The translations under genes were made by a program, and so were the position numbers. Below, piece after piece: positions 1 through 64,000 of a DNA stretch of 64,000 bases. The notes below the pieces were generated by a model. That model searched no databases and had not been told where the DNA came from. It saw only the letters and a program-made list of their open reading frames with translations. The DNA lies in assembly GCA_964035545.1 (NCBI GenBank), contig CAXIUT010000230.1, forward strand, positions 1,116,001 through 1,180,000, in the 5' to 3' direction. Each line of letters opens with the position of its first letter. Position 1 is the stretch's first letter. The stretch comes from Bugula neritina (Eukaryota; Animalia; Bryozoa).

Positions 1-3000
1 TACTGCAACATACTGAAATACACTGGAACATATTGAAATACACTGCGACACATTGAAACATACTGCAACATACTGAAATATACTGCAAGATACTGCAACA
101 TACTGAAACAGACTGTGACATACTGAAATACACTGCAACATACTGCAAGATACCGCAACCTACTGAAATACACTGTAACATATTGAAATACACTGCATCA
201 TACTGCAACATACTGAATTACACTGGAACATATTGATAGACACTGCAACACACTGAAATATACTGCAACACACTGAAACATACGGCAATATACCAAAATA
301 TACTGCGACACCTTGAAAAATACTGCAACATACGAAATATACTGCAAGTGGTGCAACATACTGAAATACAATGTGACACACTGGAATACACTGCAACATA
401 CTGCAACATACTGCAACATACTGAAATACACTGTAACATATTGAATTACACTGCATCATACTGCAACATACTGAAAAACACTGGAACATATTGATATGCA
501 CTGCAACTCATTGAAATATACTGCAACACACTGCAACATACGGCAGCATACCAAAATATAATGCGACACTTTGAAAAATACTGCAACATACTGAAATATA
601 CTGCAAGTGGTGCAACATACTGAATTACACTCTAACATACTGAAATATGCTGTAGCATACTGAAATACACTGCAACACACTGAAGTATACTGTAATACAC
701 TGAAATGTAATGCAACATACTGAATTATACTGCAACATAGTGCAACATACTGAAATACACTGTGACACACTGAAATACACTGAAACATAATGCAACATAC
801 TGCAACATACTGAAATACACTGTAACATATCGAAATACACTGCAACATACTGCAACATACTGCAACATACTGAAATACACCGTAACATATCGAAATACAC
901 TGCAACATACTGCAACACACTGAAATGCACCGGAACATAATGGAATACCCTGCAACAGATTGAAATATACTGCGACAGACTGAAACATAAGGTAACACAA
1001 TGAAGTATACTGCGACACATTAAAATATACTGCAACATACTGAAATATACTGCAACATACTGAAATGTAATGTAATATACAGAAACGTACTGTAACATAC
1101 TGAATTACACTCTAACATACTGAAACATGCTGTAGCATACTGAAATACACTGCAACACACTGAAGTATACTGTAATACACTGAAATGTGATGCAACATAC
1201 TGAATTATACTGCAACATAGTGCAACATACTGAAATACACTACAACAAACTGCAACATACTGAAATACACTGGAACATATTGAAATACACTGCGACACAT
1301 TGAAACATACTGCAACATACTGAAATACACTGGGACACATTGAAATATACTGTAACATACTGTAACATAATAAAATACACTGCAACACATTAAAAGATAC
1401 TGCAACATACTGAAACATACTGCAACATACTGCAACATACTGAAATACACCGTAACATATCGAAATACACTGCAACATACTGCAACATACTGAAATGCAC
1501 CGGAACATAATGGAATACCCTGCAACAGATTGAAATATACTGCAACAGACTGAAACATAAGGTAACACAATGAAGCATACTGCGACACATTAAAATATAC
1601 TGCAACATACTGAAATATACTGCAACATACTGAAATGTAATGTATTATACAGAAATGTACTGTAACATACTGAATTACACTCTAACATACTGAAACATGC
1701 TGTAGCATACTGAAATACACTGCAACACACTGAAGTATACTGTAATACACTGAAATGTGATGCAACATACTGAATTATACTGCAACATAGTGCAACATAC
1801 TGAAATACACTACAACAAACTGCAACATACTGAAATACACTGGAACATATTGAAATACACTGCGACACATTGAAACATACTGCAACATACTGAAATACAC
1901 TGGGACACATTGAAATATACTGTAACATACTGCAACATATTAAAATACACTGCAACACATTAAAATATACTGCAACATACTGAAACATACTGCAACATAC
2001 TGAAATACACTGTGACACACTGAAATACACTGCAACATACTGCAACATACTGCAACATACTGAATTACACTGGAACATATTGATATACACTGCAACACAT
2101 TGAAATATACTGCAACACACTGAACCATATGGCAACATACCGAAATTTACTGCGACACACTGAAAAATACTGCAACATACGAATTATACTTCAAGCGGTG
2201 CAACATACTGAAATACAATGTGACACACTGAAATACACTGCAACATACTGCAACATACTGCAACATACTGCAACATACTGAAATATTGTGCGACACATTG
2301 AAATATACTGCAACGTATTGAAATATACTGTAACATACTGCAACATACTAAAATACACTGCAACATACTGAAATACATTGCAACACATTAAAATATACTG
2401 CGACATACTGAAACATACTGCAACATGCTGAAATATACTGCAACATACTGAAATACACTATCACATATTGAAATATACTGCAACATACTGAATTACACTC
2501 TAACATACTGAAATATGCTGTAGCATACTGAAATACACTGCAAAACACTGAAGTATACGGTAATACACTGAAATGTTATGCAACATACTGAATTATACTG
2601 CAACATAGTGCAACATACTGAAATACACTACAACATACTGCATCATACTGAAACACACTGGAACATATTGAAATACACTGCGACACATTGAAACATACTG
2701 CAACATACTGAAATATACTGCAAGATACTGCAACATACTGAAACAGACTGTGACACACTGAAATACACTGCAACATACTGCAAGATACCGCAACCTACTG
2801 AAATACACTGTAACATATTGAAATACACTGCATCATACTGCAACATATTGAATTACACTGGAACATATTGATATACACTGCAACACACTGAAATATACTG
2901 CAACACACTGAAACATACGGCAATATACCAAAATATACTGCGACACCTTGAAAAATACTGCAACATACTGAAATATACTGCAAGTGGTGCAACATACTGA

Positions 3001-6000
3001 ATTACACTCTAACATACTGAAATATGCTGTAGCATACTGAAATACACTGCAACACACTGAAGTATACTGTAATACACTGAAATGTAATGCAACATACTGA
3101 ATTATACTGCAACATAGTGCAACATACTGAAATACACTGTGACACACTGAAATACACTGAAACATAATGCAACATACTGCAACATACTGAAATACACTGT
3201 AACATATCGAAATACACTGCAACATACTGCAACATACTGCAACATACTGAAATACACCGTAACATATCGAAATACACTGCAACATACTGCAACATACTGA
3301 AATGCACCGGAACATAATGGAATACCCTGCAACAGATTGAAATATACTGCGACAGACTGAAACATAAGGTAACACAATGAAGTATACTGCGACACATTAA
3401 AATATACTGCAACATACTGAAATATACTGCAACATACTGAAATGTAATGTAATATACAGAAATGTACTGTAACATACTGAATTACACTCTAACATACTGA
3501 AACATGCTGTAGCATACTGAAATACACTGCAACACACTGAAGTATACTGTAATACACTGAAATGTGATGCAACATACTGAATTATACTGCAACATAGTGC
3601 AACATACTGAAATACACTACAACAAACTGCAACATACTGAAATACACTGGAACATATTGAAATACACTGCGACACATTGAAACATACTGCAACATACTGA
3701 AATACACTGGGACACATTGAAATATACTGTAACATACTGTAACATAATAAAATACACTGCAACACATTAAAATATACTGCAACATACTGAAACATACTGC
3801 AACATACTGAAATACACTGTGACACACTGAAATACACTGCAACATACTGAAATACATTGCAACACATTAAAATATATTGCGACATACTGAAACATACTGC
3901 AACATGCTGAAATATACTGCAACATACTGAAATACACTATCACATATTGAAATATACTGCAACATACTGAATTACACTCTAACATACTGAAATATGCTGT
4001 AGCATACTGAAATACACTGCAACACACTGAAGTATACTGTAATACACTGAAATGTAATGCAAAATACTGAATTATACTGCAACATAGTGCAACATACTGA
4101 AATACACTACAACATACTGCAACATACTGAAATACACTGGAACATATTGAAATACACTGCGACACATTGAAACATACTGCAACATACTGAAATATACTGC
4201 AAGATACTGCAACATACTGAAACAGACTGTGACATACTGAAATACACTGCAACATACTGCAAGATACCGCAACCTACTGAAATACACTGTAACATATTGA
4301 AATACACTGCATCATACTGCAACATACTGAATTACACTGGAACATATTGATTTACACTGCAACACATTGAAATATACTGCAACACACTGAAACATACGGC
4401 AATATACCAAAATATACTGCGACACCTTGAAAAATACTGCAACATACGAAATATACTGCAAGTGGTGGAACATACTGAAATACAATGTGACACACTGGAA
4501 TACACTGCAACATACTGCAACATACTGCAACATACTGAAATACACTGTAACATATTGAGTTACACTGCATCATACTGCAACATACTGAAAAACACTGGAA
4601 CATATTGATATGCACTGCAACTCATTGAAATATACTGCAACACACTGCAACATACGGCAGCATACCGAAATATACTGCGACACCTTGAAAAATACTGCAA
4701 CATACTGAAATATACTGCAAGTGGTGCAACATACTGAATTACACTCTAACATACTGAAATATGCTGTAGCATACTGAAATACACTGCAACACACTGAAGT
4801 ATACTGTAATACACTGAAATGTAATGCAACATACTGAATTATACTGCAACATAGTGCAACATACTGAAATACACTGTGACACACTGAAATACACTGAAAC
4901 ATAATGCAACATACTGCAACATACTGAAATACACTGTAACATATCGAAATACACTGCAACATACTGCAACATACTGCAACATACTGAATTACACCGTAAC
5001 ATATCGAAATACACTGCAACATACTGCAACATACTGAAATGCACCGGAACATAATGGAATACCCTGCAACAGATTGAAATATACTGCAACAGACTGAAAC
5101 ATAAGGTAACACAATGAAGTATACTGCGACACATTAAAATATACTGCAACATACTGAAATATACTGCAACATACTGAAATGTAATGTATTATACAGGAAT
5201 GTACTGTAACATACTGAATTACACTCTAACATACTGAAACATGCTGTAGCATACTGAAATACACTGCAACACACTGAAGTATACTGTAATACACTGAAAT
5301 GTGATGCAACATACTGAATTATACTGCAACAAACTGCAACATACTGAAATAGACTGGAACATATTGAAATACACTGCGACACATTGAAACATACTGCAAC
5401 ATACTGAAATACACTGGGACACATTGAAATATACTGTAACATACTGCAACATACTAAAATACACTGCAACACATTAAAATATACTGCAACATACTGAAAC
5501 ATACTGCAACATACTGAAATACACTGTGACACACTGAAATACACTGCAACATACTGCAACATACTGCAACATACTGAATTACACTGGAACATATTGATAT
5601 ACACTGCAACACATTGAAATATACTGCAACACACTGAACCATATGGCAACATACCGAAATTTACTGCGACACACTGAAAAATACTGCAACATACGAATTA
5701 TACTTCAAGCGGTGCAACATACTGAAATACAATGTGACACACTGAAATACACTGCAACATACTGCAACATACTGCAACATACTGAAATATTGTGCGACAC
5801 ATTGAATTATACTGCAACGTATTGAAATATACTGTAACATACTGCAACATACTAAAATACACTGCAACATACTGAAATACATTGCAACACATTAAAATAT
5901 ACTGCGACATACTGAAACATACTGCAACATGCTGAAATATACTGCAACATACTGAAATACACTATAACATATTGAAATATACTGCAACATACTGAATTAC

Positions 6001-9000
6001 ACTCTAACATACTGAAATATGCTGTAGCATACTGAAATACACTGCAACACACTGAAGTATACTGTAATACACTGAAATGTAATGCAACATACTGAATTAT
6101 ACTGCAACATAGTGCAACATACTGAAATACACTACAACATACTCCAACATACTGAAATACACTGGAACATATTGAAATACACTGCGACACATTGAAACAT
6201 ACTGCAACATACTGAAGTATACTGCAAGATACTGCAACATACTGAAACAGACTGTGACATACTGAAATACACTGCAACATACTGCAAGATACCGCAACCT
6301 ACTGAAATACACTGTAACATATTGAAATACACTGCATCATACTGCAACATACTGAATTACACTGGAACATATTGATATACACTGCAACACATTGAAATAT
6401 ACTGCAACACACTGAAACATACGGCAATATACCAAAATATACTGCGACACCTTGAAAAATACTGCAACATACGAAATATACTGCAAGTGGTGCAACATAC
6501 TGAAATACAATGTGACACACTGGAATACACTGCAACATACTGCAACATACTGAAATATTGTGCGACACAATAAAATATACTGCAACATATTGAAATATAC
6601 TGTAATATACTGCAACATACTAAAATACACTGCAACACATTAAAATATACTGCAACATACTGAAACATACTGCAACATACTGAAATACACTGTGACACAC
6701 TGAAATACACTGCAACATACTGCAACATACTGCAACATACTGCAACATACTGAATTACACTGGAACATATCGATATACACTGCAACACATTGAAATATAC
6801 TGCAACACACTGAACCATATGGCAACATACCGAAATTTACTGCGACACACTGAAAAATACAGCAACATACGAATTATACTTCAAGTGGTGCAACATACTG
6901 AAATACAATGTGACACACTGAAATACACTGCAACATACTGCAACATACTGCAACATACTGAAATATTGTGCGACACATTGAAATATACAGCAACGTATTG
7001 AAATATACTGTAACATACTGCAACATACTAAAATACACTGCAACATACTGAAATACATTGCAACACATTAAAATATACTGCGACATACTGAAACATACTG
7101 CAACATGCTGAAATATACTGCAACATACTGAAAGACACTATCACATATTGAAATATACTGCAACATACTGAATTACACTCTAACAAACTGAAATATGCTG
7201 TAGCATACTGAAATACACTGCAACACACTGAAGTATACTGTAATACACTGAAATGTAATGCAACATACTGAATTATACTGCAACATAGTGCAACATACTG
7301 AAATACACTACAACATACTGCAACATACTGAAATACACTGGAACATATTGAAATACACTGCGACACATTGAAACATACTGCAACATACTGAAATATACTG
7401 CATGATACTGCAACATACTGAAACAGACTGTGACATACTGAAATACACTGCAACATACTGCAAGATACCGCAACCTACTGAAATACACTGTAACATATTG
7501 AAATACACTGCATCATACTGCAACATACTGAATTACACTGGAACATATTGATAGACACTGCAACACACTGAAATATACTGCAACACACTGAAACATACGG
7601 CAATATACCAAAATATACTGCGACACCTTGAAAAATACTGCAACATACGAAATATACTGCAAGTGGTGCAACATACTGAAATACAATGTGACACACTGGA
7701 ATACACTGCAACATACTGCAACATACTGCAACATACTGAAATACACTGTAACATATTGAATTACACTGCATCATACTGCAACATACTGAAAAACACTGGA
7801 ACATATTGATATGCACTGCAACTCATTGAAATATACTGCAACACACTGCAACATACGGCAGCATACCGAAATATACTGCGACACCTTGAAAAATACTGCA
7901 ACATACTGAAATATACTGCAAGTGGTGCAACATACTGAATTACACTCTAACATACTGAAATATGCTGTAGCATACTGAAATACACTGCAACACACTGAAG
8001 TATACTGTAATACACTGAAATGTAATGCAACATACTGAATTATACTGCAACATAGTGCAACATACTGAAATACACTGTGACATATCGAAATACACTGCAA
8101 CATACTGCAACATACTGCAACATACTGAAATACACCGTAACATATCGAAATACACTGCAACATACTGCAACATACTGAAATGCACCGGAACATAATGGAA
8201 TACCCTGCAACAGATTGAAATATACTGCAACAGACTGAAACATAAGGTAACACAATGAAGTATACTGCGACACATTAAAATATACTGCAACATACTGAAA
8301 TATACTGCAACATACTGAAATGTAATGTATTATACAGAAATGTACTGTAACATACTGAATTACACTCTAACATACTGAAACATGCTGTAGCATACTGAAA
8401 TACACTGCAACACACTGAAGTATACTGTAATACACTGAAATGTGATGCAACATACTGAATTATACTGCAACATAGTGCAACATACTGAAATACACTACAA
8501 CAAACTGCAACATACTGAAATACACTGGAACATATTGAAATACACTGCGACACATTGAAACATACTGCAACATACTGAAATACACTGGGACACATTGAAA
8601 TATACTGTAACATACTGCAACATATTAAAATACACTGCAACACATTAAAATATACTGCAACATACTGAAACATACTGCAACATACTGAAATACACTGTGA
8701 CACACTGAAATACACTGCAACATACTGCAACATACTGCAACATACTGAATTACACTGGAACATATTGATATACACTGCAACACATTGAAATATACTGCAA
8801 CACACTGAACCATATGGCAACATACCGAAATTTACTGCGACACACTGAAAAATACTGCAACATACGAATTATACTTCAAGCGGTGCAACATACTGAAATA
8901 CAATGTGACACACTGAAATACACTGCAACATACTGCAACATACTGCAACATACTGCAACATACTGAAATATTGTGCGACACATTGAAATATACTGCAACG

Positions 9001-10900
9001 TATTGAAATATACTGTAACATACTGCAACATACTAAAATACACTGCAACATACTGAAATACATTGCAACACATTAAAATATACTGCGACATACTGCAACA
9101 TACTGAAATGCACCGGAACATAATGGAATACCCTGCAACAGATTGAAATATACTGCGACAGACTGAAACATAAGGTAACACAATGAAGTATACTGCGACA
9201 CATTAAAATATACTGCAACATACTGAAATATACTGCAACATACTGAAATGTAATGTAATATACAGAAATGTACTGTAACATACTGAATTACACTCTAACA
9301 TACTGAAACATGCTGTAGCATACTGAAATACACTGCAACACACTGAAGTATACTGTAATACACTGAAATGTAATGCAAAATACTGAATTATACTGCAACA
9401 TAGTGCAACATACTGAAATACACTGTAACATATTGAAATACACTGCGACACATTGAAACATACTGCAACATACTGAAATACACTGGGACACATTGATATA
9501 TACTGTAACATACTGTAACATAATAAAATACACTGCAACACATTAAAATATACTGCAACATACTGAAACATACTGCAACATACTGAAATACACTGTGACA
9601 CACTGAAATACACTGCAACATACTGAAATACATTGCAACACATTAAAATATATTGCGACATACTGAAACATACTGCAACATGCTGAAATATACTGCAACA
9701 TACTGAAATACACTATCACATATTGAAATATACTGCAACATACTGAATTACACTCTAACATACTGAAATATGCTGTAGCATACTGAAATACACTGCAACA
9801 CACTGAAGTATACTGTAATACACTGAAATGTAATGCAAAATACTGAATTATACTGCAACATAGTGCAACATACTGAAATACACTACAACATACTGCAACA
9901 AACTGAAATACACTGGAACATATTGAAATACACTGCGACACATTGAAACATACTGCAACATACTGAAATATACTGCAAGATACTGCAACATACTGAAACA
10001 GACTGTGACATACTGAAATACACTGCAACATACTGCAAGATACCGCAACCTACTGAAATACACTGTAACATATTGAAATACACTGCATCATACTGCAACA
10101 TACTGAATTACACTGGAACATATTGATTTACACTGCAACACATTGAAATATACTGCAACACACTGAAACATACGGCAATATACCAAAATATACTGCGACA
10201 CCTTGAAAAATACTGCAACATACGAAATATACTGCAAGTGGTGGAACATACTGAAATACAATGTGACACACTGGAATACACTGCAACATACTGCAACATA
10301 CTGCAACATACTGAAATACACCGTAACATATCGAAATACACTGCAACATACTGCAACATACTGAAATGCACCGGAACATAATGGAATACCCTGCAACAGA
10401 TTGAAATATACTGCAACAGACTGAAACATAAGGTAACGCAATGAAGTATACTGCGACACATTAAAATATACTGCAACATACTGAAATATACTGCAACATA
10501 CTGAAATGTAATGTATTATACAGAAATGTACTGTAACATACTGAATTACACTCTAACATACTGAAACATGCTGTAGCATACTGAAATACACTGCAACACA
10601 CTGAAGTATACTGTAATACACTGAAATGTGATGCAACATACTGAATTATACTGCAACAAACTGCAACATACTGAAATACACTGGAACATATTGAAATACA
10701 CTGCGACACATTGAAACATACTGCAACATACTGAAATACACTGGGATACATTGAAATATACTGTAACATACTGCAACATACTAAAATACACTGCAACACA
10801 TTAAAATATACTGCAACATACTGAAACATACTGCAACATACTGAAATACACTGTGACACACTGAAATACACTGCAACATACTGCAACACACTGCAACATA
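1..10900 (+). repeat. Left flanking (more heterogeneous) satellite layer
   Basis: Carries motifs absent from the core: TATTGTGCGAC...CAACGTATTG (~2284, 5788, 6964, 8969), CTATCAC (~2458, 3937, 7138, 9713), AACAGACTGTGAC (~107, 2743, 4222, 6247, 7423, 9997) and TTCAAGCGG (~2190, 5705, 8875). Module order is irregular. Confidence 0.85.
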
Positions 10901-11420
10901 CTGAATTACACTGGAACATGTTGATATACACTGCAACACATTGAAATATACTGCAACACAGAACCATATGGCAACATACCGAAATTTACTGCGACACACT
11001 GAAAAATACAGCAACATACGAATTATACTTCAAGTGGTGCAACATACTGAAATACAATGTGACACACTGAAATACACTGCAACATACTGCAACATACTGC
11101 AACATACTAAAATACACTGCAACACATTAAAATATACTGCAACATACTGAAACATACTGCAACATACTGAAATACACTGTGACACACTGAAATACACTGC
11201 AACATACTGCAACATACTGCAACATACTGCAACATACTGAATTACACTGGAACATATCGATATACACTGCAACACATTGAAATATACTGCAACACACTGA
11301 ACCATATGGCAACATACCAAAATTTACTGCGACACACTGAAAAATACAGCAACATACGAATTATACTTCAAGTGGTGCAACATACTGAAATACAATGTGA
11401 CACACTGAAATACACTGCAA

Positions 11421-11790
11421 CATACTGCAACATACTGCAACATACTAAAATACACTGCAACACATTAAAATATACTGCAACATACTGAAACATACTGCAA
11501 CATACTGAAATACACTGTGACACACTGAAATACACTGCAACATACTGCAAGATACCGCAACCTACTGAAATACACTGTAACATATTGAAATGCACTGCAT
11601 CATACTGCAACATACTGCAACATACTAAAATACACTGCAACACATTAAAATATACTGCAACATACTGAAACATACTGCAACATACTGAAATACACTGTGA
11701 CATACTGAAATACACTGCAACATACTGCAAGATACCGCAACCTACTGAAATACACTGTAACATATTGAAATACACTGCATCATACTGCAA
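11421..11790 (+). repeat. 180-bp tandem sub-repeat (x2) marked by GCAAGATACCGCAACCTAC; present in most core HOR copies
   Basis: CATACTAAAA at 11441 and 11621; GATACCGCAACC at 11551 and 11731. Confidence 0.9.
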
Positions 11791-12599
11791 CATACTGAAT
11801 TACACTGGAACATATTGATTTACACTGCAACACATTGAAATATACTGCAACACACTGAAACATACGGCAATATACCAAAATATACTGCGACACCTTGAAA
11901 AATACTGCAACATACGAAATATACTGCAAGTGGTGGAACATACTGAAATACAATTTGACACACTGGAATACACTGCAACATACTGCAACATACTGCAACA
12001 TACTGAAATACACTGTAACATATTGAATTACACTGCATCATACTGCAACACACTGAAAAAACACTGGAACATATTGATATGCACTGCAACTCATTGAAAT
12101 ATACTGCAACACACTGCAACATACGGCAGCATACCGAAATATACTGCGACACCTTGAAAAATACTGCAACATACTGAAATATACCGCAAGTGGTGCAACA
12201 TACTGAATTACACTCTAACATACTGAAATATGCTGTAGCATACTGAAATACACTGCAACACACTGAAGTATACTGTAATACACTGAAATGTAATGCAACA
12301 TACTGAATTATACTGCAACATAGTGCAACATACTGAAATACACTGTGACACACTGAAATACACTGAAACATAATGCAACATACTGCAACATACTGAAATA
12401 CACTGTAACATATCGAAATACACTGCAACATACTGCAACATACTGCAACATACTGAAATACACCGTAACATATCGAAATACACTGCAACATACTGCAACA
12501 TACTGAAATGCACCGGAACATAATGGAATACCCTGCAACAGATTGAAATATACTGCAACAGACTGAAACATAAGGTAACACAATGAAGTATACTGCGAC

Positions 12600-49340: not shown

Positions 49341-50599
49341 AGTGCAACATACTGAATTACACTGGAACATATTGATTTACACTGCAACACATTGAAATAT
49401 ACTGCAACACACTGAAACATACGGCAATATACCGAAATATACTTCGACACCTTGAAAAATACTGCAACATACGAAATATACTGCAAGTGGTGGAACATAC
49501 TGAAATACAATGTGACACACTGGAATACACTGCAACATACTGCAACATACTGCAACGTACTGAAATACACTGTAACATATTGAATTACACTGCATCATAC
49601 TGCAACACACTGAAAAACACTGGAACATATTGATATGCACTGCAACTCATTGAAATATACTGCAACACACTGCAACATACGGCAGCATACCGAAATATAC
49701 TGCGACACCTTGAAAAATACTGCAACATACTGAAATATACCGCAAGTGGTGCAACATACTGAATTACACTCTAACATACTGAAATATGCTGTAGCATACT
49801 GAAATACACTACAACACACTGAAGTATACTGTAATACACTGAAATGTAATGCAACATACTGAACTATACTGCAACATAGTGCAACATACTGAAATACACT
49901 GTGACACACTGAAATACACTGAAACATAATGCAACATACTGCAACATACTGAAATACACTGTTACATATCGAAATACACTGCAACATACTGCAACATACT
50001 GCAACATACTGAAATACACCGTAACATATCGAAATACACTGCAACATACTGCAACATACTGAAATGCACCGGAACATAATGGAATACCCTGCAACAGATT
50101 GAAATATACTGCAACAGACTGAAACATAAGGTAACACAATGAAGTATACTGCGACACATTAAAATATACTGCAACATACTGAAATATACTGCAACATACT
50201 GAAATGTAATGTATTATACAGAAATGTACTGTAACATACTGAATTACACTCTAACATACTGAAACATGCTGTAGCATACTGAAATACACTGCAACACACT
50301 GAAGTATACTGTAATACACTGAAATGTGATGCAACATACTGAATTATACTGCAACAAACTGCAACATACTGAAATACACTGGAACATATTGAAATACACT
50401 GCGACACATTGAAACATACTGCAACATACTGAAATACACTGGGACACATTGAAATATACTGTAACATACTGCAACATACTAAAATACGCTGCAACACATT
50501 AAAATATACTGCAACATACTGAAACATACTGCAACATACTGAAATACACTGTAACACACTGAAATACACTGCAACATACTGCAACATACTGCAACATAC

Positions 50600-51460
50600 T
50601 GAATTACACTGGAACATGTTGATATACACTGCAACACATTGAAATATACTGCAACACACTAAACCATATGGCAACATACCAAAATTTACTGCGACACACT
50701 GAAAAATACAGCAACATACGAATTATACTTCAAGTGGTGCAACATACTGAAATACAATGTGACACACTGAAATACACTGCAACATACTGCAACATACTGC
50801 AACATACTAAAATACACTGCAACACATTAAAATATACTGCAACATACTGAAACATACTGCAACATACTGAAATACACTGTGACACACTGAAATACACTGC
50901 AACATACTGCAACATACTGCAACATACTGCAACATACTGAATTACACTGGAACATATCGATATACACTGCAACACATTGAAATATACTGCAACACACTGA
51001 ACCATATGGCAACATACCGAAATTTACTGCGACACACTGAAAAATACAGCAACATACGAATTATACTTCAAGTGGTGCAACATACTGAAATACAATGTGA
51101 CACACTGAAATACACTGCAACATACTGCAACATACTAAAATACACTGCAACACATTAAAATATACTGCAACATACTGAAACATACTGCAACATACTGAAA
51201 TACACTGTGACACACTGAAATACACTGCAACATACTGCAACATACTGCAACATACTGCAACATACTGAATTACACTGGAACATATCGATATACACTGCAA
51301 CACATTGAAATATACTGCAACACAATGAACCATATGGCAACATACCGAAATTTACTGCGACACACTGAAAAATACTGCAACATACGAATTATACTTCAAG
51401 TGGTGCAACATACTGAAATACAATGTGACACACTGAAATACACTGCAACATACTGCAACA
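50600..51460 (+). repeat. 338/328-bp sub-repeat with three CCATATGG modules in tandem
   Basis: ATGGCAAC landmarks at 50668, 51006 and 51334. The second interval lacks one monomer. Confidence 0.85.
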
Positions 51461-54400
51461 TACATCAACATACTGAAATATTGTGCGACACATTGAAATA
51501 TACTGCAACGTATTGAAATATACTGTAACATACTGCAACATACTAAAATACACTGCAACATACTGAAATACATTGCAACACATTAAAATATACTGCGACA
51601 TACTGAAACATACTGCAACATGCTGAAAAATACTGCAACATACTGAAAGACACTATCACATATTGAAATATACTGCAACATACTGAATTACACTCTAACA
51701 TACTGAAATATGCTGTAGCATACTGAAATACACTGCAACACACTGAAGTATACTGTAATACACTGAAATGTAATGCAACATACTGAATTATACTGCAACA
51801 TAGTGCAACATACTGAAATACACTACAACATACTGCAACATACTGAAATACACTGGAACATATTGAAATACACTGCGACACATTGAAACATACTGCAACA
51901 TACTGAAGTATACTGCAAGATACTGCAACATACTGAAACAGACTGTGACATACTGAAATACACTGCAACATACTGCAAGATACCGCAACCTACTGAAATA
52001 CACTGTAACATATTGAAATACACTGCATAATACTGCAACATACTGAATTACACTGGAACATATTGATATACACTGCAACACACTGAAATATACTGCAACA
52101 CACTGAAACATACGGCAATATACCAAAATATACTGCGACACCTTGAAAAATACTGCAACATACGAAATATACTGCAAGTGGTGCAACATACTGAAATACA
52201 ATGTGACACACTGGAATACACTGCAACATAATGCAACATACTGAAATATTGTGCGACACAATAAAATATACTGCAACATATTGAAATATACTGTAATATA
52301 CTGCAACATACTAAAATACACTGCAACACATTAAAATATACTGCAACATACTGAAACATACTGCAACATACTGAAATACACTGTGACACACTGAAATACA
52401 CTGCAACATACTGCAACATACTGCAACATACTAAAATACACTGCAAGACATTAAAATATACTGCAACATACTGAAACATACTGCAACATACTGAAATATA
52501 CTGCAACACACTGAAACATACGGCAACATACCGAAATAAACTGCAACACGTTGAAAATTATTTAAACATACTGAAATATACTGCGACGCCTTAAAATATA
52601 CTGCAACATACTGAAATAGACTGCAAGTGGTGCAACATACTGAAATACACTGTGACACACTGAAATACACTGCAACATACTGAAACATACTGCAACATAC
52701 TGAAATATTGTGCGACACACTGAAATACACTGCAATATACTGCAACATACTGCAACATACTGAATTACACTGGAACATATTGATATACACTGCAACACAT
52801 TGAAATATACTGCAACACACTGCAACATACAGCAGCATACCGAAATATACTGCGACACCTTGAAAAATACTGCAACATACTGAAATATACTGCAAGTGGT
52901 GCAACATACTGAATTACACTCTAACATACTGAAATATGCTGTAGCATACTGAAATACACTGCAACACACTGAAGTATACTGTAATACACTGAAATGTAAT
53001 GCAACATACTGAATTATACTGCAACATAGTGCAACATACTGAAATACACTGTGACACACTGAAATACACTGAAACATAATGCAACATACTGCAACATACT
53101 GAAATACACTGTAACATATCGAAATACACTGCAACATACTGCAACATACTGCAACATACTGAAATACACCGTAACATATCGAAATACACTGCAACATACT
53201 GCAACATACTGAAATGCACCGGAACATAATGGAATACCCTGCAACAGATTGAAATATACTGCAACAGACTGAAACATAAGGTAACACAATGAAGTATACT
53301 GCGACACATTAAAATATACTGCAACATACTGAAATATACTGCAACATACTGAAATGTAATGTATTATACAGAAATGTACTGTAACATACTGAATTACACT
53401 CTAACATACTGAAACATGCTGTAGCATACTGAAATACACTGCAACACACTGAAGTATACTGTAATACAGTGAAATGTGATGCAACATACTGAATTATACT
53501 GCAACATAGTGCAACATACTGAAATACACTACAACAAACTGCAACATACTGAAATACACTGGAACATATTGAAATACACTGCGACACATTGAAACATACT
53601 GCAACATACTGAAATACACTGGGACACATTGAAATATACTGTAACATACTGCAACATACTAAAATACACTGCAACACATTAAAATATACTGCAACATACT
53701 GAAACATACTGCAACATACTGAAATACACTGTGACACACTGAAATACACTGCAACATACTGCAACATACTGCAACATACTGAATTACACTGGAACATGTT
53801 GATATACACTGCAACACATTGAAATATACTGCAACACACTGAACCATATGGCAACATACCGAAATTTACTGCGACACACTGAAAAATACAGCAACATACG
53901 AATTATACTTCAAGTGGTGCAACATACTGAAATACAATGTGACACACTGAAATACACTGCAACATACTGCAACATACTGCAACATACTAAAATACACTGC
54001 AACACATTAAAATATACTGCAACATACTGAAACATACTGCAACATACTGAAATACACTGTGACACACTGAAATACACTGCAACATACTGCAACATACTGC
54101 AACATACTGCAACATACTGAATTACACTGGAACATATCGATATACACTGCAATACATTGAAATATACTGCAACACACTGAACCATATGGCAACATACCGA
54201 AATTTACTGCGACACACTGAAAAATACTGCAACATACGAATTATACTTCAAGTGGTGCAACATACTGAAATACAATGTGACACACTGAAATACACTGCAA
54301 CATACTGCAACATACTGCAACATACTGAAATATTGTGCGACACATTGAAATATACTGCAACGTATTGAAATATACTGTAACATACTGCAACATACTAAAA

Positions 54401-55500
54401 TACACTGCAACATACTGAAATACATTGCAACACATTAAAATATACTGCGACATACTGAAACATACTGCAACATGCTGAAATATACTGCAACATACTGAAA
54501 GACACTATCACATATTGAAATATACTGCAACATACTGAATTACACTCTAACATACTGAAATATGCTGTAGCATACTGAAATACACTGCAACACACTGAAG
54601 TATACTGTAATACACTGAAATGTAATGCAACATACTGAATTATACTGCAACATAGTGCAACATACTGAAATACACTACAACATACTGCAACATACTGAAA
54701 TACACTGGAACATATTGAAATACACTGCGACACATTGAAACATACTGCAACATACTGAAGTATACTGCAAGATACTGCAACATACTGAAACAGACTGTGA
54801 CATACTGAAATACACTGCAACATACTGCAAGATACCGCAACCTACGGAAATACACTGTAACATATTGAAATACACTGCATAATACTGCAACATACTGAAT
54901 TACACTGGAACATATTGATATACACTGCAACACATTGAAATATACTGCAACACACTGAAACATACGGCAATATACCAAAATATACTGCGACACCTTGAAA
55001 AATACTGCAACATACGAAATATACTGCAAGTGGTGCAACATACTGAAATACAATGTGACACACTGGAATACACTGCAACATACTGCAACATACTGAAATA
55101 TTGTGCGACACAATAAAATATACTGCAACATATTGAAATATACTGTAATATACTGCAACGTACTAAAATACACTGCAACACATTAAAATATACTGCAACA
55201 TACTGAAACATACTGCAACATACTGAAATACACTGTGACACACTGAAATACACTGCAACATACTGCAACATACTGCAACATACTAAAATACACTGCAAGA
55301 CATTAAAATATACTGCAACATACTGAAACATACTGCAACATACTGAAATATACTGCAACACACTGAAACATACGGCAACATACCGAAATAAACTGCGACA
55401 CGTTGAAAATTATTTCAACATACTGAAATATACTGCGACGCCTTAAAATATACTGCAACATACTGAAATAGACTGCAAGTGGTGCAACATACTGAAATAC
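51334..55500 (+). repeat. 2852-bp offset duplication in right flank; third partial copy from 57726 (offset 3540)
   Basis: Landmarks 51352/54204, 51788/54640 and 52048/54900. Shared alleles CTGCATAATAC (~52023/54875) and GAAAGACACTATC (~51645/54497/58037). Confidence 0.8.
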
Positions 55501-58500
55501 ACTGTGACACACTGAAATACACTGCAACATACTGCAACATACTGCAACATACTGAAATATTGTGCGACACACTGAAATACACTGCAATATACTGCAACAT
55601 ACTGCAACATACTGAATTACACTGGAACATATTGATATACACTGCAACACATTGAAATATACTGCAACACACTGAACCATATGGCAACATACCGAAATTT
55701 ACTGCGACACACTGAAAAATACTGCAACATACGAATTATACTTCAAGCGGTGCAACATACTGAAATACAATGTGACACACTGAAATACACTGCAACATAC
55801 TGCAACATACTGCAACATACTGCAACATACTGAAATATTGTGCGACACATTGAAATATACTGCAACGTATTGAAATATACTGTAACATACTGCAACATAC
55901 TAAAATACACTGCAACATACTGAAATACATTGCAACACATTAAAATATACTGCGACATACTGAAACATACTGCAACATGCTGAAATATACTGCAACATAC
56001 TGAAATACACTATCACATATTGAAATATACTGCAACATACTGAAATATACTGCAACATACTGAAATGTAATGTAATATACAGAAATGTACTGTAACATAC
56101 TGAATTACACTCTAACATACTGAAACATGCTGTAGCATACTGAAATACACTGCAACACACTGAAGTATACTGTAATACACTGAAATGTGATGCAACATAC
56201 TGAATTATACTGCAACATAGTGCAACATACTGAAATACACTACAACAAACTGCAACATACTGAAATACACTGGAACATATTGAAATACACTGCGACACAT
56301 TGAAACATACTGCAACATACTGAAATACACTGGGACACATTGAAATATACTGTAACATACTGTAACATAATAAAATACACTGCAACACATTAAAATATAC
56401 TGCAACATACTGAAACATACTGCAACATACTGAAATACACTGTGACACACTGAAATACACTGCAACATACTGAAATACATTGCAACACATTAAAATATAT
56501 TGCGACATACTGAAACATACTGCAACATGCTGAAATATACTGCAACATACTGAAATACACTATCACATATTGAAATATACTGCAACATACTGAATTACAC
56601 TCTAACATACTGAAATATGCTTTAGCATACTGAAATACACTGCAACACACTGAAGTATACTGTAATACACTGAAATGTAATGCAAAATACTAAATTATAC
56701 TGCAACATAGTGCAACATACTGAAATACACTACAACATACTGAAACATACTGAAATACACTGGAACATATTGAAATACACTGCGACACATTGAAACATAC
56801 TGCAACATACTGAAATATACTGCAAGATACTGCAACATACTGAAACAGACTGTGACAAACTGAAATACACTGCAACATACTGCAAGATACCGCAACCTAC
56901 TGAAATACACTGTAACATGTTGAAATACACTGCATCATACTGCAACATACTGAATTACACTGGAACATATTGATTTACACTGCAACACATTGAAATATAC
57001 TGCAACACACTGAAACATACGGCAATATACCAAAATATACTGCGACACCTTAAAAAATACTGCAACATACGAAATATACTGCAAGTGGTGGAACATACTG
57101 AAATACAATGTGACACACTGGAATACACTGCAACATACTGCAACATACTGCAACATACTGAAATACACTGTAACATATTGAATTACACTGCATCATACTG
57201 CAACATACTGAAAAACACTGGAACATATTGATATGCACTGCAACTCATTGAAATATACTGCAACACACTGCAACATACGGCAGCATACCGAAATATACTG
57301 CGACACCTTGAAAAATACTGCAACATACTGAAATATACTGCAAGTGGTGCAACATACTGAATTACACTCTAACATACTGAAATATGCTGTAGCATACTGA
57401 ATTACACTGCAACACACTGAAGTATACTGTAATACACTGAAATGTAATGCAACATACTGAATTATACTGCAACATAGTGCAACATACTGAAATACACTGT
57501 GACACACCGAAATACACTGAAACATAATGCAACATACTGCAACATACTGAAATACACTGTAACATATCGAAATACACTGCAACATACTGCAACATACTGC
57601 AACATACTGAAATACACCGTAACATATCGAAATACACTGCAACATACTGCAACATACTGAAATGCACCGGAACATAATGGAATACCCTGCAACAGATTGA
57701 AATATACTGCAACACACTGAACCATATGGCAACATACCGAAATTTACTGCGACACACTGAAAAATACTGCAACATACGAATTATACTTCAAGTGGTGCAA
57801 CATACTGAAATACAATGTGACACACTGAAATACACTGCAACATACTGCAACATACTGCAACATACTGAAATATTGTGCGACACATTGAAATATACTGCAA
57901 CGTATTGAAATATACTGTAACATACTGCAACATACTAAAATACACTGCAACATACTGAAATACATTGCAACACATTAAAATATACTGCGACATACTGAAA
58001 CATACTGCAACATGCTGAAATATACTGCAACATACTGAAAGACACTATCACATATTGAAATATACTGCAACATACTGAATTACACTCTAACATACTGAAA
58101 TATGCTGTAGCATACTGAAATACACTGCAACACACTGAAGTATACTGTAATACACTGAAATGTAATGCAACATACTGAATTATACTGCAACATAGTGCAA
58201 CATACTGAAATACACTACAACATACTGCAACATACTGAAATACACTGGAACATATTGAAATACACTGCGACACATTGAAACATACTGCAACATACTGAAG
58301 TATACTGCAAGATACTGCAACATACTGAAATATTGTGCGACACAATAAAATATACTGCAACATATTGAAATATACTGTAACATACTGCAACATACTAAAA
58401 TAGACTGCAACACATTAAAATATACTGCAACATACTGAAACATACTGCAACATACTGAAATACACTGTGACACACTGAAATACACTGCAACATACTGCAA

Positions 58501-59469
58501 CATACTGCAACATACTAAAATACACTGCAAGACATTAAAATATACTGCAACATACTGAAACATACTGCAACATACTGAAATATACTGCAACACACTGAAA
58601 CATACGGCAACATACCGAAATAAACTGCGACACGTTGAAAATTATTTCAACATACTGAAATATACTGCGACGCCTTAAAATATACTGCAACTTACTGAAA
58701 TAGACTGCAAGTGGTGCAACATACTGAAATACACTGTGACACACTGAAATACACTGCAACATACTGCAACATACTGCAACATACTGAAATATTGTGCGAC
58801 ACACTGAAATACACTGCAATATACTGCAACATACTGCAACATACAGAATTACACTGGAACATATTGATATACACTGCAACACATTGAAATATACAGCAAC
58901 ACACTGAACCATATGGCAACATACCGAAATTTACTGCGACACACTGAAAAATACTGCAACATATGAAATATACTTCAAGCGGTGCAACATACTGAAATAC
59001 AATGTGACACACTGAAATACACTGCAACATACTGCAACATACTGCAACATACTGCAACATACTGCAACATACTGAAATATTGTGCGACACATTGAAATAT
59101 ACTGCAACGTATTGAAATATACTGTAACATACTGCAACATACTAAAATACACTGCAATATACTGAAATACATTGCAACACATTAAAATATACTGCGACAT
59201 ACTGAAACATACTGCAACATGATGAAATATACTGCAACATACTGAAATACACTGTCACATATTGAAATATACTGCAACATACTGAATTACACTCTAACAT
59301 ACTGAAATATGCTGTAGCATACTGAAATACACTGCAACACACTGAAGTATACTGTAATACACTGAAATGTAATGCAACATACTGAATTATACTGCAACAT
59401 AGTGCAACATACTGAAATACACTGTGACACACTGAAATACACTGAAACATAATGCAACATACTGCAACA

Positions 59470-62400
59470 TACTGAAACATACGGCAATATACCAAAATAT
59501 ACTGCGACACCTTGAAAAATACTGCAACATACGAAATATACTGCAAGTGGTGCAACATACTGAAATACAATGTGACACACTGGAATACACTGCAACATAC
59601 TGCAACATACTGCAACATACTGAAATACACTGTAACATATTGAATTACACTGCATCATACTGCAACATACTGAAAAACACTGGAACTTATTGATATGCAC
59701 TGCAACTCATTGAAATATACTGCAACACACTGCAACATACGGCAGCATACCGAAATATACTGCGACACCTTGAAAAATACTGCAACATACTGAAATATAC
59801 TGCAAGTGGTGCAACATACTGAATTACACTCTAACATACTGAAATATGCTGTAGCATACTGAAATACACTGCAACACACTGAAGTATACTGTAATACACT
59901 GAAATGTAATGCAACATACTGAATTATACTGCAACATAGTGCAACATACTGAAATACACTGTGACACACTGAAATACACTGAAACATAATGCAACATACT
60001 GCAACATACTGAAATACACTGTAACATATCGAAATACACTGCAACATACTGCAACATACTGCAACATACTGAAATACACCGTAACATATCGAAATACACT
60101 GCAACATACTGCAACATACTGAAATGCACCGGAACATAATGGAATACCCTGCAACAGATTGAAATATACTGCGACAGACTGAAACATAAGGTAACACAAT
60201 GAAGTATACTGCGACACATTAAAATATACTGCAACATACTGAAATATACTGCAACATACTGAAATGTAATGTAATACACAGAAATGTACTGTAACATACT
60301 GAATTACACTCTAACATACTGAAACATGCTGTAGCATACTGAAATACACTGCAACACACTGAAGTATACTGTAATACACTGAAATGTGATGCAACATACT
60401 GAATTATACTGCAACATAGTGCAACATACTGAAATACACCACAACAAACTGCAACATACTGAAATACACTGGAACATATTGAAATACACTGCGACACATT
60501 GAAACATACTGCAACATACTGAAATACACTGGGACACATTGAAATATACTGTAACATACTGCAACATACTAAAATACACTGCAACACATTAAAATATACT
60601 GCAACATACTGAAACATACTGCAACATACGGAAATACACTGTGACACACTGAAATACACTGCAACATACTGCAACATACTGCAACATACTAAAATACACT
60701 GCAAGACATTAAAATATACTGCAACATACTGAAACATACTGCAACATACTGAAATATACTGCAACACACTGAAACATACGGCAACATACCGAAATAAACT
60801 GCGACACGTTGAAAATTATTTCAACATACTGAAATATACTGCGACGCCTTAAAATATACTGCAACATACTGAAATAGACTGCAAGTGGTGCAACATACTG
60901 AAATACACTATGACACACTGAAATACACTGAAACATACTGCAACATACTGCAACATACTGAAATATTGTGCGACACACTGAAATACACTGCAATATACTG
61001 CAACATACTGCAACATACTGAATTACACTGGAACATATTGATATACACTGCAACACATTAAAATATACTGCAACACACTGAACCATATGGCAACATACCG
61101 AAATTTACTGCGACACACTGAAAAATACTGCAACATACGAATTATACTTCAAGCGGTGCAACATACTGAAATACAATGTGACACACTGAAATACACTGCA
61201 ACATACTGCAACATACTGCAACATACTGCAACATACTGCAACATACTGAAATATTGTGCGACACATTGAAATATACTGCAACGTATTGAAATATACTGTA
61301 ACATACTGCAACATACTAAAATACACTGCAACATACTGAAATACATTGCAACACATTAAAATATACTGCGACATACTGAAACATACTGCAACATGCTGAA
61401 ATATACTGCAACATACTGAAATACACTATCACATATTGAAATATACTGCAACATACTGAATTACACTCTAACATACTGAAATATGCTGTAGCATACTGAA
61501 ATACACTGCAACACACTGAAGTATACGGTAATACACTGAAATGTAATGCAACATACCGAATTATACTGCAACATAGTGCAACATACTGAAATACACTACA
61601 ACATACTGCAACATACTGAAATACACTGGAACATATTGAAATACACTGCGACACATTGAAACATACTGCAACATACTGAAATATACTGCAAGATACTGCA
61701 ACATACTGAAACAGACTGTGACATACTGAAATACACTGCAACATACTGCAAGATACCGCAACCTACTGAAATACACTGTAACATATTGAAATACACTGCA
61801 TCATACTGCAACATACTGAATTACACTGGAACATATTGATATACACTGCAACACACTGAAATATACTGCAACACACTGAAACATACGGCAATATACCAAA
61901 ATATACTGCGACACCTTGAAAAATACTGCAACATACGAAATATACTGCAAGTGGTGCAACATACTGAAATACAATGTGACACACTGGAATACACTGCAAC
62001 ATACTGCAACATGCTGCAACATACTGAAATACACTGTAACATATTGAATTACACTGCATCATACTGCAACATACTGAAAAACACTGGAACATATTGATAT
62101 GCACTGCAACTCATTGAAATATACTGCAACACACTGCAACATACGGCAGCATACCGAAATATACTGCGACACATTGAAAAATACTGCAACATACTGAAAT
62201 ATACTGCAAGTGGTGCAACATACTGAATTACACTCTAACATACTGAAATATGCTGTAGCATACTGAAATACACTGCAACACACTGAAGTATACTGTAATA
62301 CACTGAAATGTAATGCAACATACTGAATTATACTGCAACATAGTGCAACATACTGAAATACACTGTTACACACTGAAATACACTGAAACATAATGCAACA

Positions 62401-64000
62401 TACTGCAACATACTGAAATACACTGTAACATATCGAAATACACTGCAACATACTGCAACATACTGAAATGCACCGGAACATAATGGAATACCTTGCAACA
62501 GATTGAAATATACTGCGACAGACTGAAACATAAGGTAACACAATGAAGTATACTGCGACACATTAAAATATACTGCAACATACTGAAATATACTGCAACA
62601 TACTGAAATGTAATGTAATATACAGAAATGTACTGTAACAAACTGAATTACACTCTAACATACTGAAACATGCTGTAGCATACTGAAATACACTGCAACA
62701 CACTGAAGTATACTGTAATACACTGAAATGTGATGCAACATACTGAATTATACTGCAACATAGTGCAACATACTGAAATATACTACAACAAACTGCAACA
62801 TACTGAAATACACTGGAACATATTGAAATACACTGCGACACATTGAAACATACTGCAACATACTGAAATACACTGGGACACATTGAAATATACTGTAACA
62901 TACTGCAACATACTAAAATACACTGCAACACATTAAAATATACTGCAACATACTGAAACATACTGCAACATACTGAAATACACTGTGACACACTGAAATA
63001 CACTGCAACATACTGCAACATACTGCAACATACTAAAATACACTGCAAGACATTAAAATATATTGCAACATACTGAAACATACTGCAACATACTGAAATA
63101 TACTGCAACACACTGAAACATACGGCAACATACCGAAATAAACTGCGACACGTTGAAAATTATTTCAACATACTGAAATATACTGCGACGCCTTAAAATA
63201 TACTGCAACATACTGAAATAGACTGCAAGTGGTGCAACATACTGAAATACACTGTGACACACTGAAATACACTGAAACATACTGCAACATACTGCAACAT
63301 ACTGAAATATTGTGCGACACACTGAAATACACTGCAATATACTGCAACATACTGCAACATACTGCATTACACTGGAACATATTGATATACACTGCAACAC
63401 ATTGAAATATACTGCAACACACTGAACCATATGGCAACATACCGAAATTTACTGCGACACACTGAAAAATACTGCAACATACGAATTATATTTCAAGCGG
63501 TGCAACATACTGAAATACAATGTGACACACTGAAATACACTGCAACATACTGCAACATACTGCAACATACTGAAATATTGTGCGACACATTGAAATATAC
63601 TGCAACGTATTGAAATATACTGTAACATACTGCAACATACTAAAATACACTGCAACATACTGAAATACATTGCAACACATTAAAATATACTGCGACATAC
63701 TGAAACATACTGCAACATGCTGAAATATACTGCAACATACTGAAATACACTATCACATATTGAAATATACTGCAACATACTGAATTACACTCTAACATAC
63801 TGAAATATGCTGTAGCATACTGAAATACACTGCAACACACTGAAGTATACGGTAATACACTGAAATGTAATGCAACATACTGAATTATACTGCAACATAG
63901 TGCAACATACTGAAATACACTACAACATACTGCAACATACTGAAATACACTGGAACATATTGAAATACACTGCGACACATTGAAACATACTGCAACATAC
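59470..64000 (+). repeat. Flank-type HOR, period 2344-2404 bp (about two copies)
   Basis: Landmarks 60219/62563, 60709/63053 and 61087/63431 differ by 2344. 59655/62059 differ by 2404, because one 60-bp sub-block is missing in the second copy near 62430. Confidence 0.8.

What the first reader, a model, noticed from the sequence alone, without database searches (positions are those of the whole stretch)
1..64000. Symmetric layered expansion: a young homogeneous HOR core inside older, mutually matching flanks, built on a 10-bp monomer
Seen: allele ranges are roughly nested around ~13-35 kb. ACGATTTAT spans 15.1-31.2 kb, CAATTTGAC 11.95-35.8 kb, the 6-A insertion 12.05-43.15 kb, GTGGTGACAC 13.08-44.5 kb, GGGATAC 10.7-48.1 kb, CCAAAATTT 11.3-50.7 kb and AAAATACAGC 6.9-53.9 kb. 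CTATCAC, AACAGACTGTGAC, TATTGTGCGAC and TTCAAGCGG occur only outside, on both sides. Established: primate alpha-satellite shows layered expansion, with the newest HORs in the middle displacing older layers outward and the kinetochore tending to lie on recent layers. Inference: this is the same process in miniature in a decamer satellite, making the core a candidate active-centromere or expansion site.
Basis: partly seen in the sequence, partly recalled or inferred. Interest (0 to 1): 0.8.

Follow-up and report, generated by a model that had tools for sequence, protein, structure and literature searches.

The report
Young clone inside older decamer satellite
A 64-kb stretch of a 10-letter tandem repeat contains a 36-kb block of almost identical 2.4-kb repeat units that was copied very recently inside an older, messier array of the same repeat; this is the ordinary way satellite DNA turns over, and nothing here shows a centromere.

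Summary
The whole window is one uninterrupted, one-orientation satellite with a 10-bp monomer and a 20-bp dimer. It is organised into higher-order repeat (HOR) units of about 2.4 kb, ranging from 1.0 to 4.4 kb.

**What holds up**
- About 10.75-46.5 kb is a near-clonal core. The nearest copies differ by 0-0.8 changes per kb.
- The core was built by a few multi-kb duplications, at lags of 5.87, 4.1, 4.9 and 16.1 kb.
- The flanks are 5-10 times older, at about 1-10 changes per kb.
- The flanks share 55 variant classes that the core lacks, against about 2 expected by chance. Left and right copies intermix on a tree.

**What does not hold up**
- Multi-layer mirror symmetry is not supported. In an unbiased variant scan the left range ends pile up at 11-13 kb while the right ends spread over 31-63 kb. 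Spearman rho is +0.03, where nesting predicts a negative value.
- The flank thirds show no mirror order.
- The core/flank junction is sharp on the left, and graded and itself duplicated on the right.
- Within shared blocks, flank copies are no closer to each other than to the core (11 versus 9.5 changes per kb).

**Best reading:** one lineage of an old, heterogeneous array expanded locally as a clone.

**Centromere claim:** untested. It is weakened by unverified earlier scan notes of the same decamer satellite at several other places on this piece and on other pieces of this (ciliate) genome.

The parts
1..10745 (+). Left flank: an older, structurally heterogeneous mosaic of HOR blocks, with units of 2377, 1737, 3201 and 4268 bp.
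   Evidence: blocks matching the core unit at 0.97-0.99 alternate with flank-only blocks that match it below 0.9; nearest-copy divergence is 1-8 per kb.
10746..46500 (+). Homogeneous core: about 14 HOR units of 1048-3171 bp. Unit types 2911+1226 dominate from 12 to 36 kb, and types 2393/2473 from 36 to 45.6 kb.
   Evidence: collinear with the reference unit at 0.995 or better; mutual identity 0.985-0.999; nearest-copy divergence 0-0.76 per kb; anchor spacing.
36970..39362 (+). Reference 2393-bp HOR unit (R) used for all mapping. It holds about 239 decamers plus frame-shifting 8- and 9-bp monomers.
   Evidence: (2393 is the commonest repeat distance), and (116 phase changes across the window).
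19652..31389 (+). Youngest event: a tandem duplication of about 5.87 kb (19652-25518 matching 25513-31389) with no substitutions and one 10-bp indel.
   Evidence: lag 5871, 3869 bp, 0 mismatches; lag 5861, 1997 bp, 0 mismatches.
12598..35253 (+). A 16,090-bp-lag repeat pair (12598-19163 matching 28688-35253). Together with lags 16360 and 17757 it makes the core roughly two copies of a 16-17 kb super-unit.
   Evidence: 6566 bp with 5 mismatches.
36726..46499 (+). A 4865-bp tandem duplication (36726-41634 matching 41591-46499). It copies the core/flank junction, so flank-type hybrid units sit at about 40.6-41.6 kb and 45.5-46.4 kb.
   Evidence: 4909 bp with 3 mismatches; units 40762 and 45627 carry flank alleles and pair together at 93/92 support.
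46501..64000 (+). Right flank: an older mosaic with units of 2333, 3150, 4448, 2462 and 2404 bp. Its inner part (about 48.1-50.4 kb) is nearly collinear with the core unit.
   Evidence: 1.5-10.6 per kb; unit 49697 groups with the core; similarity to the core falls outward from 0.955 to 0.919.
2931..5576 (+). Longest cross-flank match: 2931-5576 matching 45623-48268 (lag 42692).
   Evidence: 2646 bp, 14 mismatches (5.3 per kb). Other cross-flank diagonals lie at lags 52623, 54288 and 45025.

Best explanation
The window is part of a large array of a 10-bp satellite that evolves by unequal exchange and tandem segmental duplication in register with its HOR units.

The array was an old, heterogeneous population of kb-scale HOR units that differed pairwise by about 1% and in which blocks they contain. 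One lineage of that population, closest to the unit now at about 48-50 kb, was then amplified locally and very recently. It reached about 14 copies (36 kb) through a handful of multi-unit duplications: 4.1, 4.9 and 5.9 kb, and finally about 16 kb.

The two flanks resemble each other because they are what remains of the same old population on either side of the clone. They are not matched layers that were pushed apart step by step.

Shown: the structure, the relative ages and the duplication units. Inferred: the mechanism (unequal sister-chromatid or homologue exchange, or replication-based duplication) and neutrality.
For: - **Core homogeneity.** Core copies are identical or nearly so over multi-kb diagonals: 0 mismatches over 3869 bp plus 1997 bp, 5 over 6566 bp, and 3 over 4909 bp.
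- **Age step.** Nearest-copy divergence is 0-0.76 per kb in the core against about 1-10 per kb in the flanks, as a step.
- **Heat map.** Core copies match each other at 0.985-0.999, flanks match each other at 0.93-0.99, and flanks match the core at 0.88-0.94.
- **Shared flank variants.** There are 55 variant classes found in both flanks only, against about 2 expected; only 6 are confined to one flank.
- **Tree of the shared 1.1-kb block.** Left and right copies intermix. The core, the hybrid units and unit 49697 fall on one side of a branch with 95/97 support. Flank tips measure 0.003-0.007, and core tips 0-0.0009.
- **Old-population signature.** In collinear shared blocks the substitution rate per kb is 3.4 for core-core, 10.5 for left-left, 11.5 for right-right, 11.1 for left-right, 9.6 for core-left and 9.3 for core-right. 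That is what one old population with one clonal lineage would give.
- **No foreign sequence.** There are no inversions and no inserts longer than about 60 bp.
Against: - The order of events cannot be rooted without an outgroup array.
- The arrangement depends on a long-read assembly of a very abundant satellite, and I could not check it with reads. Only 40-60 bp unitigs were available.
- If the genome is the lead candidate, its authors warn of repeat misassembly.
- The youngest duplication does lie near the middle of the core, flanked by slightly older ones (0 against 0.5-0.8 per kb). That is what inside-out growth predicts, though it rests on very few events.
Confidence: 0.75

Rival explanations
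1. This is genuine layered expansion of the alpha-satellite kind. New HOR variants arise repeatedly in the middle, push older layers outward in mirror order, and mark the site of kinetochore assembly in the germline nucleus.
For: - There is a two-tier pattern with flank-specific variants on both sides.
- The youngest duplication is central within the core, at 19.6-31.4 kb.
- A few variants, all from one block (R400-750), occupy the core plus the adjacent units on both sides.
Against: - Range starts and ends are uncorrelated, with rho +0.03.
- Flank thirds show no mirror order.
- The left boundary is abrupt while the right is graded and duplicated.
- The 'intermediate layer' on the left rests on a single block copy at 6651-7000.
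- Flanks show no decay by transposon insertion or inversion.
- Such patterns also occur in non-centromeric satellites.
- Unverified scan notes place the same satellite at several other sites on this piece and elsewhere.
Confidence: 0.1
2. The homogeneous core is an assembly or polishing artefact. Reads from many near-identical arrays would have been threaded into one path, or the copies would have been homogenised by consensus polishing.
For: - The satellite is extremely abundant in the source-like run; X1 has unitigs over all 30 bins.
- The lead candidate genome was assembled at 20-30x HiFi with a 96% overlap threshold and then polished. Its authors attribute assembly-size differences to misassembled tandem repeats.
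Against: - The longest error-free repeat is 3.9 kb and the longest near-perfect one is 6.6 kb, both shorter than typical HiFi reads.
- Copies keep consistent private substitutions and structured unit types, rather than a smeared consensus.
- The flanks in the same contig were not homogenised.
Confidence: 0.12
3. Inter-array seeding. The core HOR did not arise in place but was brought in from another array of the family, by ectopic conversion or insertion, and then expanded.
For: - The left junction is abrupt. It includes an odd stretch at 10901-11000 that matches the core unit at only 0.73.
- A 350-bp block (R2050-2400) is present in the core and the right flank but absent from the left flank.
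- Other arrays of the family exist according to unverified scan notes.
Against: - The inner right flank carries a nearly collinear relative of the core unit that groups with the core on the tree.
- The right boundary grades through hybrid units.
- Both points fit an origin in place from a right-flank-type unit.
Confidence: 0.1

Closest known systems
Intra-array HOR-haplotype layering of human alpha-satellite ('layered expansion'; Altemose et al., bioRxiv 10.1101/2021.07.12.452052)
   Same: The central HOR variants are slightly different from, and less divergent than, those on both flanks. The flanks share variants. The youngest part is prone to recent multi-unit duplications.
   Different: - The monomer is 10 bp, not 171 bp.
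- The scale is 36 kb, not megabases.
- Only two tiers are present.
- There is no mirror order and no gradient of 17-26% divergent outer layers. The difference here is about 0.05% against about 1%.
- The flanks carry no transposon insertions or inversions.
- The boundaries are asymmetric.
- The kinetochore link is untested.
Local homogenisation and segmental tandem duplication in plant centromere satellites (for example the Arabidopsis centromere arrays; bioRxiv 10.1101/2025.06.02.657473, listed; only the abstract start was seen)
   Same: A tandem array whose variability comes from large in-register duplications and deletions, giving local blocks of near-identical units.
   Different: Those arrays have 178-bp monomers and are demonstrated centromeres. 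Here the monomer is a decamer and the function is unknown.
Simple 5-12 bp satellites of Drosophila, such as the 10-bp AATAACATAG satellite (from my own knowledge, not tested here)
   Same: A decamer monomer, strong strand asymmetry and very high copy number.
   Different: To my knowledge those arrays are not known for kb-scale HORs. Here about 239 monomer positions form a defined 2.4-kb unit, with further tiers up to 16 kb.
'Low-complexity tandem repeats' of Loxodes magnus (359 Mb of the 848-Mb germline assembly; bioRxiv 10.1101/2023.11.09.566212)
   Same: If the window is from this species, this would be one of those repeats. This is a lead only: scan notes report a ciliate with introns of about 20 nt, the best-holding run (X1) and three others listed are from one 2023 study, and the genome is rich in tandem repeats.
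   Different: The parts of the paper I searched by term give no monomer, HOR or array architecture for these repeats. Organism names were coded, so identity is not established.

Membership tests
Higher-order-repeat (HOR) satellite | Head-to-tail monomers in one orientation. | tested here: met
   TRF finds periods of 10 and 20 over 1-64000. ACTG occurs 4343 times against CAGT once. ACTG spacing is 10 bp in 2754 cases.
Higher-order-repeat (HOR) satellite | Copies one multi-monomer period apart are much more alike than neighbouring monomers. | tested here: met
   Identity is 0.64-0.72 at lags 10 and 20, against 0.99-1.00 at lags 2393, 4137, 4865, 5871 and 16090.
Layered expansion (alpha-satellite model) | The central HOR haplotype is younger and less divergent than the flanks. 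| tested here: met
   Nearest-copy divergence is 0-0.76 per kb in the core against about 1-10 per kb in the flanks. Tip lengths are 0-0.0009 against 0.003-0.007.
Layered expansion (alpha-satellite model) | Both flanks share variants or structure that the centre lacks. | tested here: met
   There are 55 variant classes found in both flanks only, against about 2 expected. Left and right copies intermix on the tree. However, within shared blocks the left-right rate of 11.1 per kb is not lower than the core-flank rate of 9.3-9.6 per kb.
Layered expansion (alpha-satellite model) | Several progressively older layers arranged in mirror order around the core. | tested here: not met
   Spearman rho between range start and range end is +0.03. 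Flank thirds show no anti-diagonal preference. The divergence profile is a step. Similarity to the core decays outward on the right only.
Layered expansion (alpha-satellite model) | Older layers decay by transposon insertion, inversion or other satellites. | tested here: not met
   The window has no reverse-strand monomers and no non-satellite stretch longer than about 60 bp.
Layered expansion (alpha-satellite model) | The kinetochore (CENP-A/CenH3) sits on the youngest layer. | not testable with these tools
   No chromatin data were available. Reads were available only as 40-60 bp unitigs.
Centromeric satellite | The array marks the single site of CenH3 loading on a chromosome. | not testable with these tools
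   This cannot be tested here. Unverified scan notes report decamer arrays at -866 kb, -742 kb, the next window and +494 kb on the same piece, and on other pieces including an rDNA spacer. That speaks against one array per chromosome.

The most novel reading that the evidence does not exclude
The decamer arrays that recur every few hundred kb along this ciliate chromosome piece (from unverified scan notes) might each carry a freshly amplified core like this one. Together they could act as repeat-based, dispersed sites of kinetochore or chromatin organisation in the germline nucleus. That would be a poly- or holocentric-like arrangement on a 10-bp satellite, with the young core as the active part.
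Probability: 0.04. Interest if true: 0.8.

Novelty: new member of a known kind. Interest (0 to 1): 0.3.

Why it matters
The finding shows that the 'young clone inside an older array' pattern, known from 171-178 bp centromeric satellites, also forms in a satellite whose monomer is a single helical turn, and at a scale 100 times smaller. That fits the view that such patterns follow from the mechanics of tandem-array turnover rather than from kinetochore activity.

For this genome it gives a worked description of a repeat class that may make up a large share of the DNA. It also yields core-specific and flank-specific markers for FISH or read-based checks.

By itself the result does not open a long-standing question.

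Tried and rejected
- **k=21 containment heat map.** Uninformative: every bin pair scored 95-100%, because the decamer makes short k-mers generic. I replaced it with FFT-based ungapped identity of 200-bp chunks.
- **Global alignment of whole units.** It forced non-homologous blocks together, so I used it only for close pairs.
- **Ungapped comparison of the 770-bp block.** It failed for flank units because of a 1-bp indel near R1300-1340. I used the 310-bp sub-block and a gapped tree instead.
- **Copy number from unitig depth.** Rejected: bins full of generic 31-mers still showed low depth, so depth reflects how unitigs were laid down, not abundance. What remains is only this: run X1 has unitigs on all bins, while X2-X4 have none at 11152-11545.
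- **Database searches.** Rfam gave no match and the phage collection none. Exact dimer strings are not found in the paper library; the 10-mer hits are unrelated primers. A 31-mer of the satellite is absent from JGI metagenome contigs. The 20-bp dimer hits 42 short contigs that hold only brief runs of a related decamer.
- **Organism.** Names were coded, so the species is not established.
Full report
**What is in the window**

All 64,000 bases are one uninterrupted tandem array.
- GC content is 0.34-0.36, and the strands are strongly asymmetric: A 42.6% and G 12.3% on the + strand.
- The monomer is a decamer. The commonest forms are ACTGCAACAT (1051 copies) and ACTGAAATAC (539 copies), and they pair into the 20-bp dimer TACTGCAACATACTGAAATA.
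- All monomers point the same way: ACTG occurs 4343 times and CAGT once.
- No stretch longer than about 60 bp departs from the satellite.
- About 116 changes of decamer phase, mostly caused by 8- and 9-bp monomers, are fixed parts of the higher-order pattern.
- No Rfam family matches.

**Higher-order structure**

Identity between positions 10 or 20 bp apart is only 0.64-0.72. Exact 80-mers, however, recur about 20 times in the middle of the window. The commonest distances are 2393, 2911, 1226, 4865, 4137 and 2403 bp.

I took 36970-39362 as the reference unit R (2393 bp) and mapped every 100-bp piece of the window onto it.
- From about 10,750 to about 46,300 the window is collinear with R at 0.995 or better, apart from internal duplications and deletions of sub-blocks.
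- Outside that range it is a mosaic. Some R blocks (R930-1290, R1340-2040, R0-300, R2050-2400) match at 0.97-0.99, and they alternate with blocks that match R below 0.9.
- A 120-bp anchor (R1400) occurs 26 times. It gives unit lengths of 2377, 1737, 3201 and 4268 in the left flank.
- In the core the unit lengths are 2561, 1226, 2911, 3171, 2911, 2960, 2911, 1226, 2911, 1048, 2393, 2392, 2473 and 2392.
- In the right flank they are 1737, 2333, 3150, 4448, 2462 and 2404.

The one exception is a missed AAAAAA at 57052. The four 'outside only' motifs are indeed absent between 9997 and 46629.

The stated nesting is looser than it sounds.
- Only three of the six successive pairs are strictly nested.
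- The left ends of six of the seven ranges fall between 10.7 and 15.1 kb.
- The widest ranges are set by single flank occurrences.

**Is the core younger?**

Yes. I scanned all diagonals for ungapped collinear stretches.

| Pair | Lag (bp) | Length (bp) | Differences |
|---|---|---|---|
| 19652-25518 with 25513-31389 | 5871 / 5861 | 3869 + 1997 | no substitutions, one 10-bp indel |
| 12598-19163 with 28688-35253 | 16090 | 6566 | 5 |
| 36726-41634 with 41591-46499 | 4865 | 4909 | 3 |

- Other core pairs differ by 1-4.4 changes per kb. The two units at 38370 and 43235 are the most distinct.
- Flank pairs differ by 5-13 changes per kb.
- For each position I took the least divergent long match anywhere in the window. 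The profile is a step: 1-8 per kb over 0-10 kb, 0-0.76 per kb over 11-46 kb, and 1.5-10.6 per kb over 46-64 kb, with no trend inside the flanks.

**Do the flanks match each other?**

Yes, in structure and in diagnostic variants.
- Heat map of 200-bp chunks against 4-kb bins: core copies match each other at 0.985-0.999, flanks match each other at 0.93-0.99, and flanks match the core at 0.88-0.94. Bins that respect the boundaries give the same result.
- All 16-mers that occur 3-60 times collapse into 269 variant classes. Of these, 55 occur in both flanks and not in the core, against about 2 expected from random placement. Only 2 are left-only and 4 are right-only.
- A maximum-likelihood tree of the shared 1.1-kb block (R930-2040) mixes left and right copies. 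One clade joins units 558, 7873 and 62161 at 90/91 support. A branch with 95/97 support separates five flank copies from the core plus the two hybrid units plus unit 49697.

There is one important nuance. Inside collinear shared blocks, the substitution rate between the two flanks is 11.1 per kb. That is no lower than the rate between either flank and the core, which is 9.3-9.6 per kb. So the flanks are not a tight sister group. They are samples of one old, diverse population, and the core is a clone of one of its lineages.

**Is there multi-layer mirror symmetry?**

This is not supported.
- Among the variants that include the core but not the whole window, range starts cluster at 10.9-13.5 kb while range ends run from 31 to 63 kb. 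Spearman rho between start and end is +0.03, or -0.14 with a wider set. Concentric layers predict a clearly negative value.
- Nested pairs exceed a random-interval null only modestly, at 225 against 167 ± 21. The shared left edge explains that excess.
- Twenty variant classes are shared by the core and the right flank only, against three for the core and the left flank only.
- With each flank divided into thirds, there is no inner-with-inner or outer-with-outer preference. All left-to-right values are 0.969-0.988, with standard errors of 0.003-0.008.
- Similarity to the core falls with distance only on the right, from 0.955 to 0.928 to 0.919. On the left it stays flat at 0.922-0.929.
- The unit-by-variant matrix shows about nine variant classes that occupy the core plus the adjacent units on both sides. 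On the left, however, they all come from one copy of one block (R397-747, at 6651-7000).
- The right boundary is not a clean edge. Units 40762 and 45627 carry flank alleles. The 4865-bp duplication copied the junction itself.
- A 350-bp block (R2050-2400) is present in the core and the right flank but not in the left flank.

**Context**

Earlier notes of this scan are unverified, and I could not read those windows. They say the following.
- The genome is a ciliate assembly with introns of about 20 nt and some bacterial contigs.
- A DNA transposon lies 35 kb upstream of the window.
- The decamer array continues into the next window.
- Further decamer arrays lie 866 and 742 kb upstream and 494 kb downstream on the same piece.
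- Others sit on other pieces, one of them in an rDNA spacer.

If these notes are right, the window frames only part of the array, so symmetry about the core cannot be judged from it. The satellite would also not be specific to one locus.

Public runs were coded. One run (X1) holds 54% of the sampled words, and three others from the same 2023 study hold about 13%. Only 40-60 bp unitigs could be laid on the window. X1 covers all 30 bins of 8000-13900, whereas X2-X4 have nothing at 11152-11545, part of the R0-900 region that is rare in the flanks. Depth could not be turned into copy number.

*Loxodes magnus* is a plausible source, but this is not established. Its introns average 19.3 nt, and 359 Mb of its germline assembly is tandem repeat. 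It was assembled from 20-30x HiFi data with Falcon and then polished, and its authors warn of repeat misassembly.

**Explanation**

The best-supported reading is ordinary satellite turnover. Unequal exchange, or replication-based tandem duplication in register with HOR units, amplified one lineage of an old array into a clone of about 36 kb. A few multi-unit steps did this, the last ones leaving no substitutions.

This works like the innermost step of the layered-expansion model. The paper that established that model notes that such expansions may be neutral and are also seen in non-centromeric satellites. Membership in the full model fails on the mirror-ordered multiple layers and on flank decay. 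The kinetochore criterion cannot be tested here.

Three rivals remain: a true centromere-linked layered expansion, an assembly or polishing artefact, and seeding from another array. Each is given about 0.1.

**Novelty and verdict**

A kb-scale HOR hierarchy built on a decamer (10, 20, then about 340/520, 2393, 4-6 kb and 16 kb) is unusual. I did not find it in the papers I searched. The evolutionary pattern itself is a new member of a known kind.

The same type of satellite was noted by the scan on other DNA of this genome.

Noticed in passing
window 36726-46499: The 4865-bp tandem duplication includes the core/flank junction. As a result, a flank-type hybrid unit appears twice (about 40.6-41.6 kb and 45.5-46.4 kb), separated by a pure core unit.
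   Followed up: yes
window 12591-44035 and 52499-63101: The 350-bp block R2050-2400 has 16 copies. It occurs in the core and the right flank but nowhere in the left flank, so the two flanks are not fully equivalent in block content.
   Followed up: partly
window 11152-11545: Unitigs of run X1 cover this core-specific stretch. Three other runs of the same study (X2-X4) have none there, although they hold the generic satellite deeply. This may reflect strain or library differences, and the tool warns that a hole proves nothing.
   Followed up: partly
L032:47-1307, L027:3520-3585, L040: JGI metagenome contigs (series Ga0105050-54, Ga0209390, Ga0335398 and others) hold short runs of a related decamer (GTGTGTTGCA / ACACTGCAAC) embedded in non-repetitive DNA. 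Some runs are in both orientations within one contig. The organism and meaning are unknown.
   Followed up: partly
whole window: HOR unit lengths are not multiples of 10 (2393, 2911, 1226). About 116 phase shifts from 8- and 9-bp monomers are conserved parts of the HOR. The + strand is 42.6% A and 12.3% G throughout.
   Followed up: partly
window 10901-11000: The left core boundary contains a roughly 100-bp stretch that matches the core unit at only 0.73. It sits next to degenerate patches (gaaccatatggcaacataccgaaatttact...) and could be the scar of the event that founded the core.
   Followed up: no
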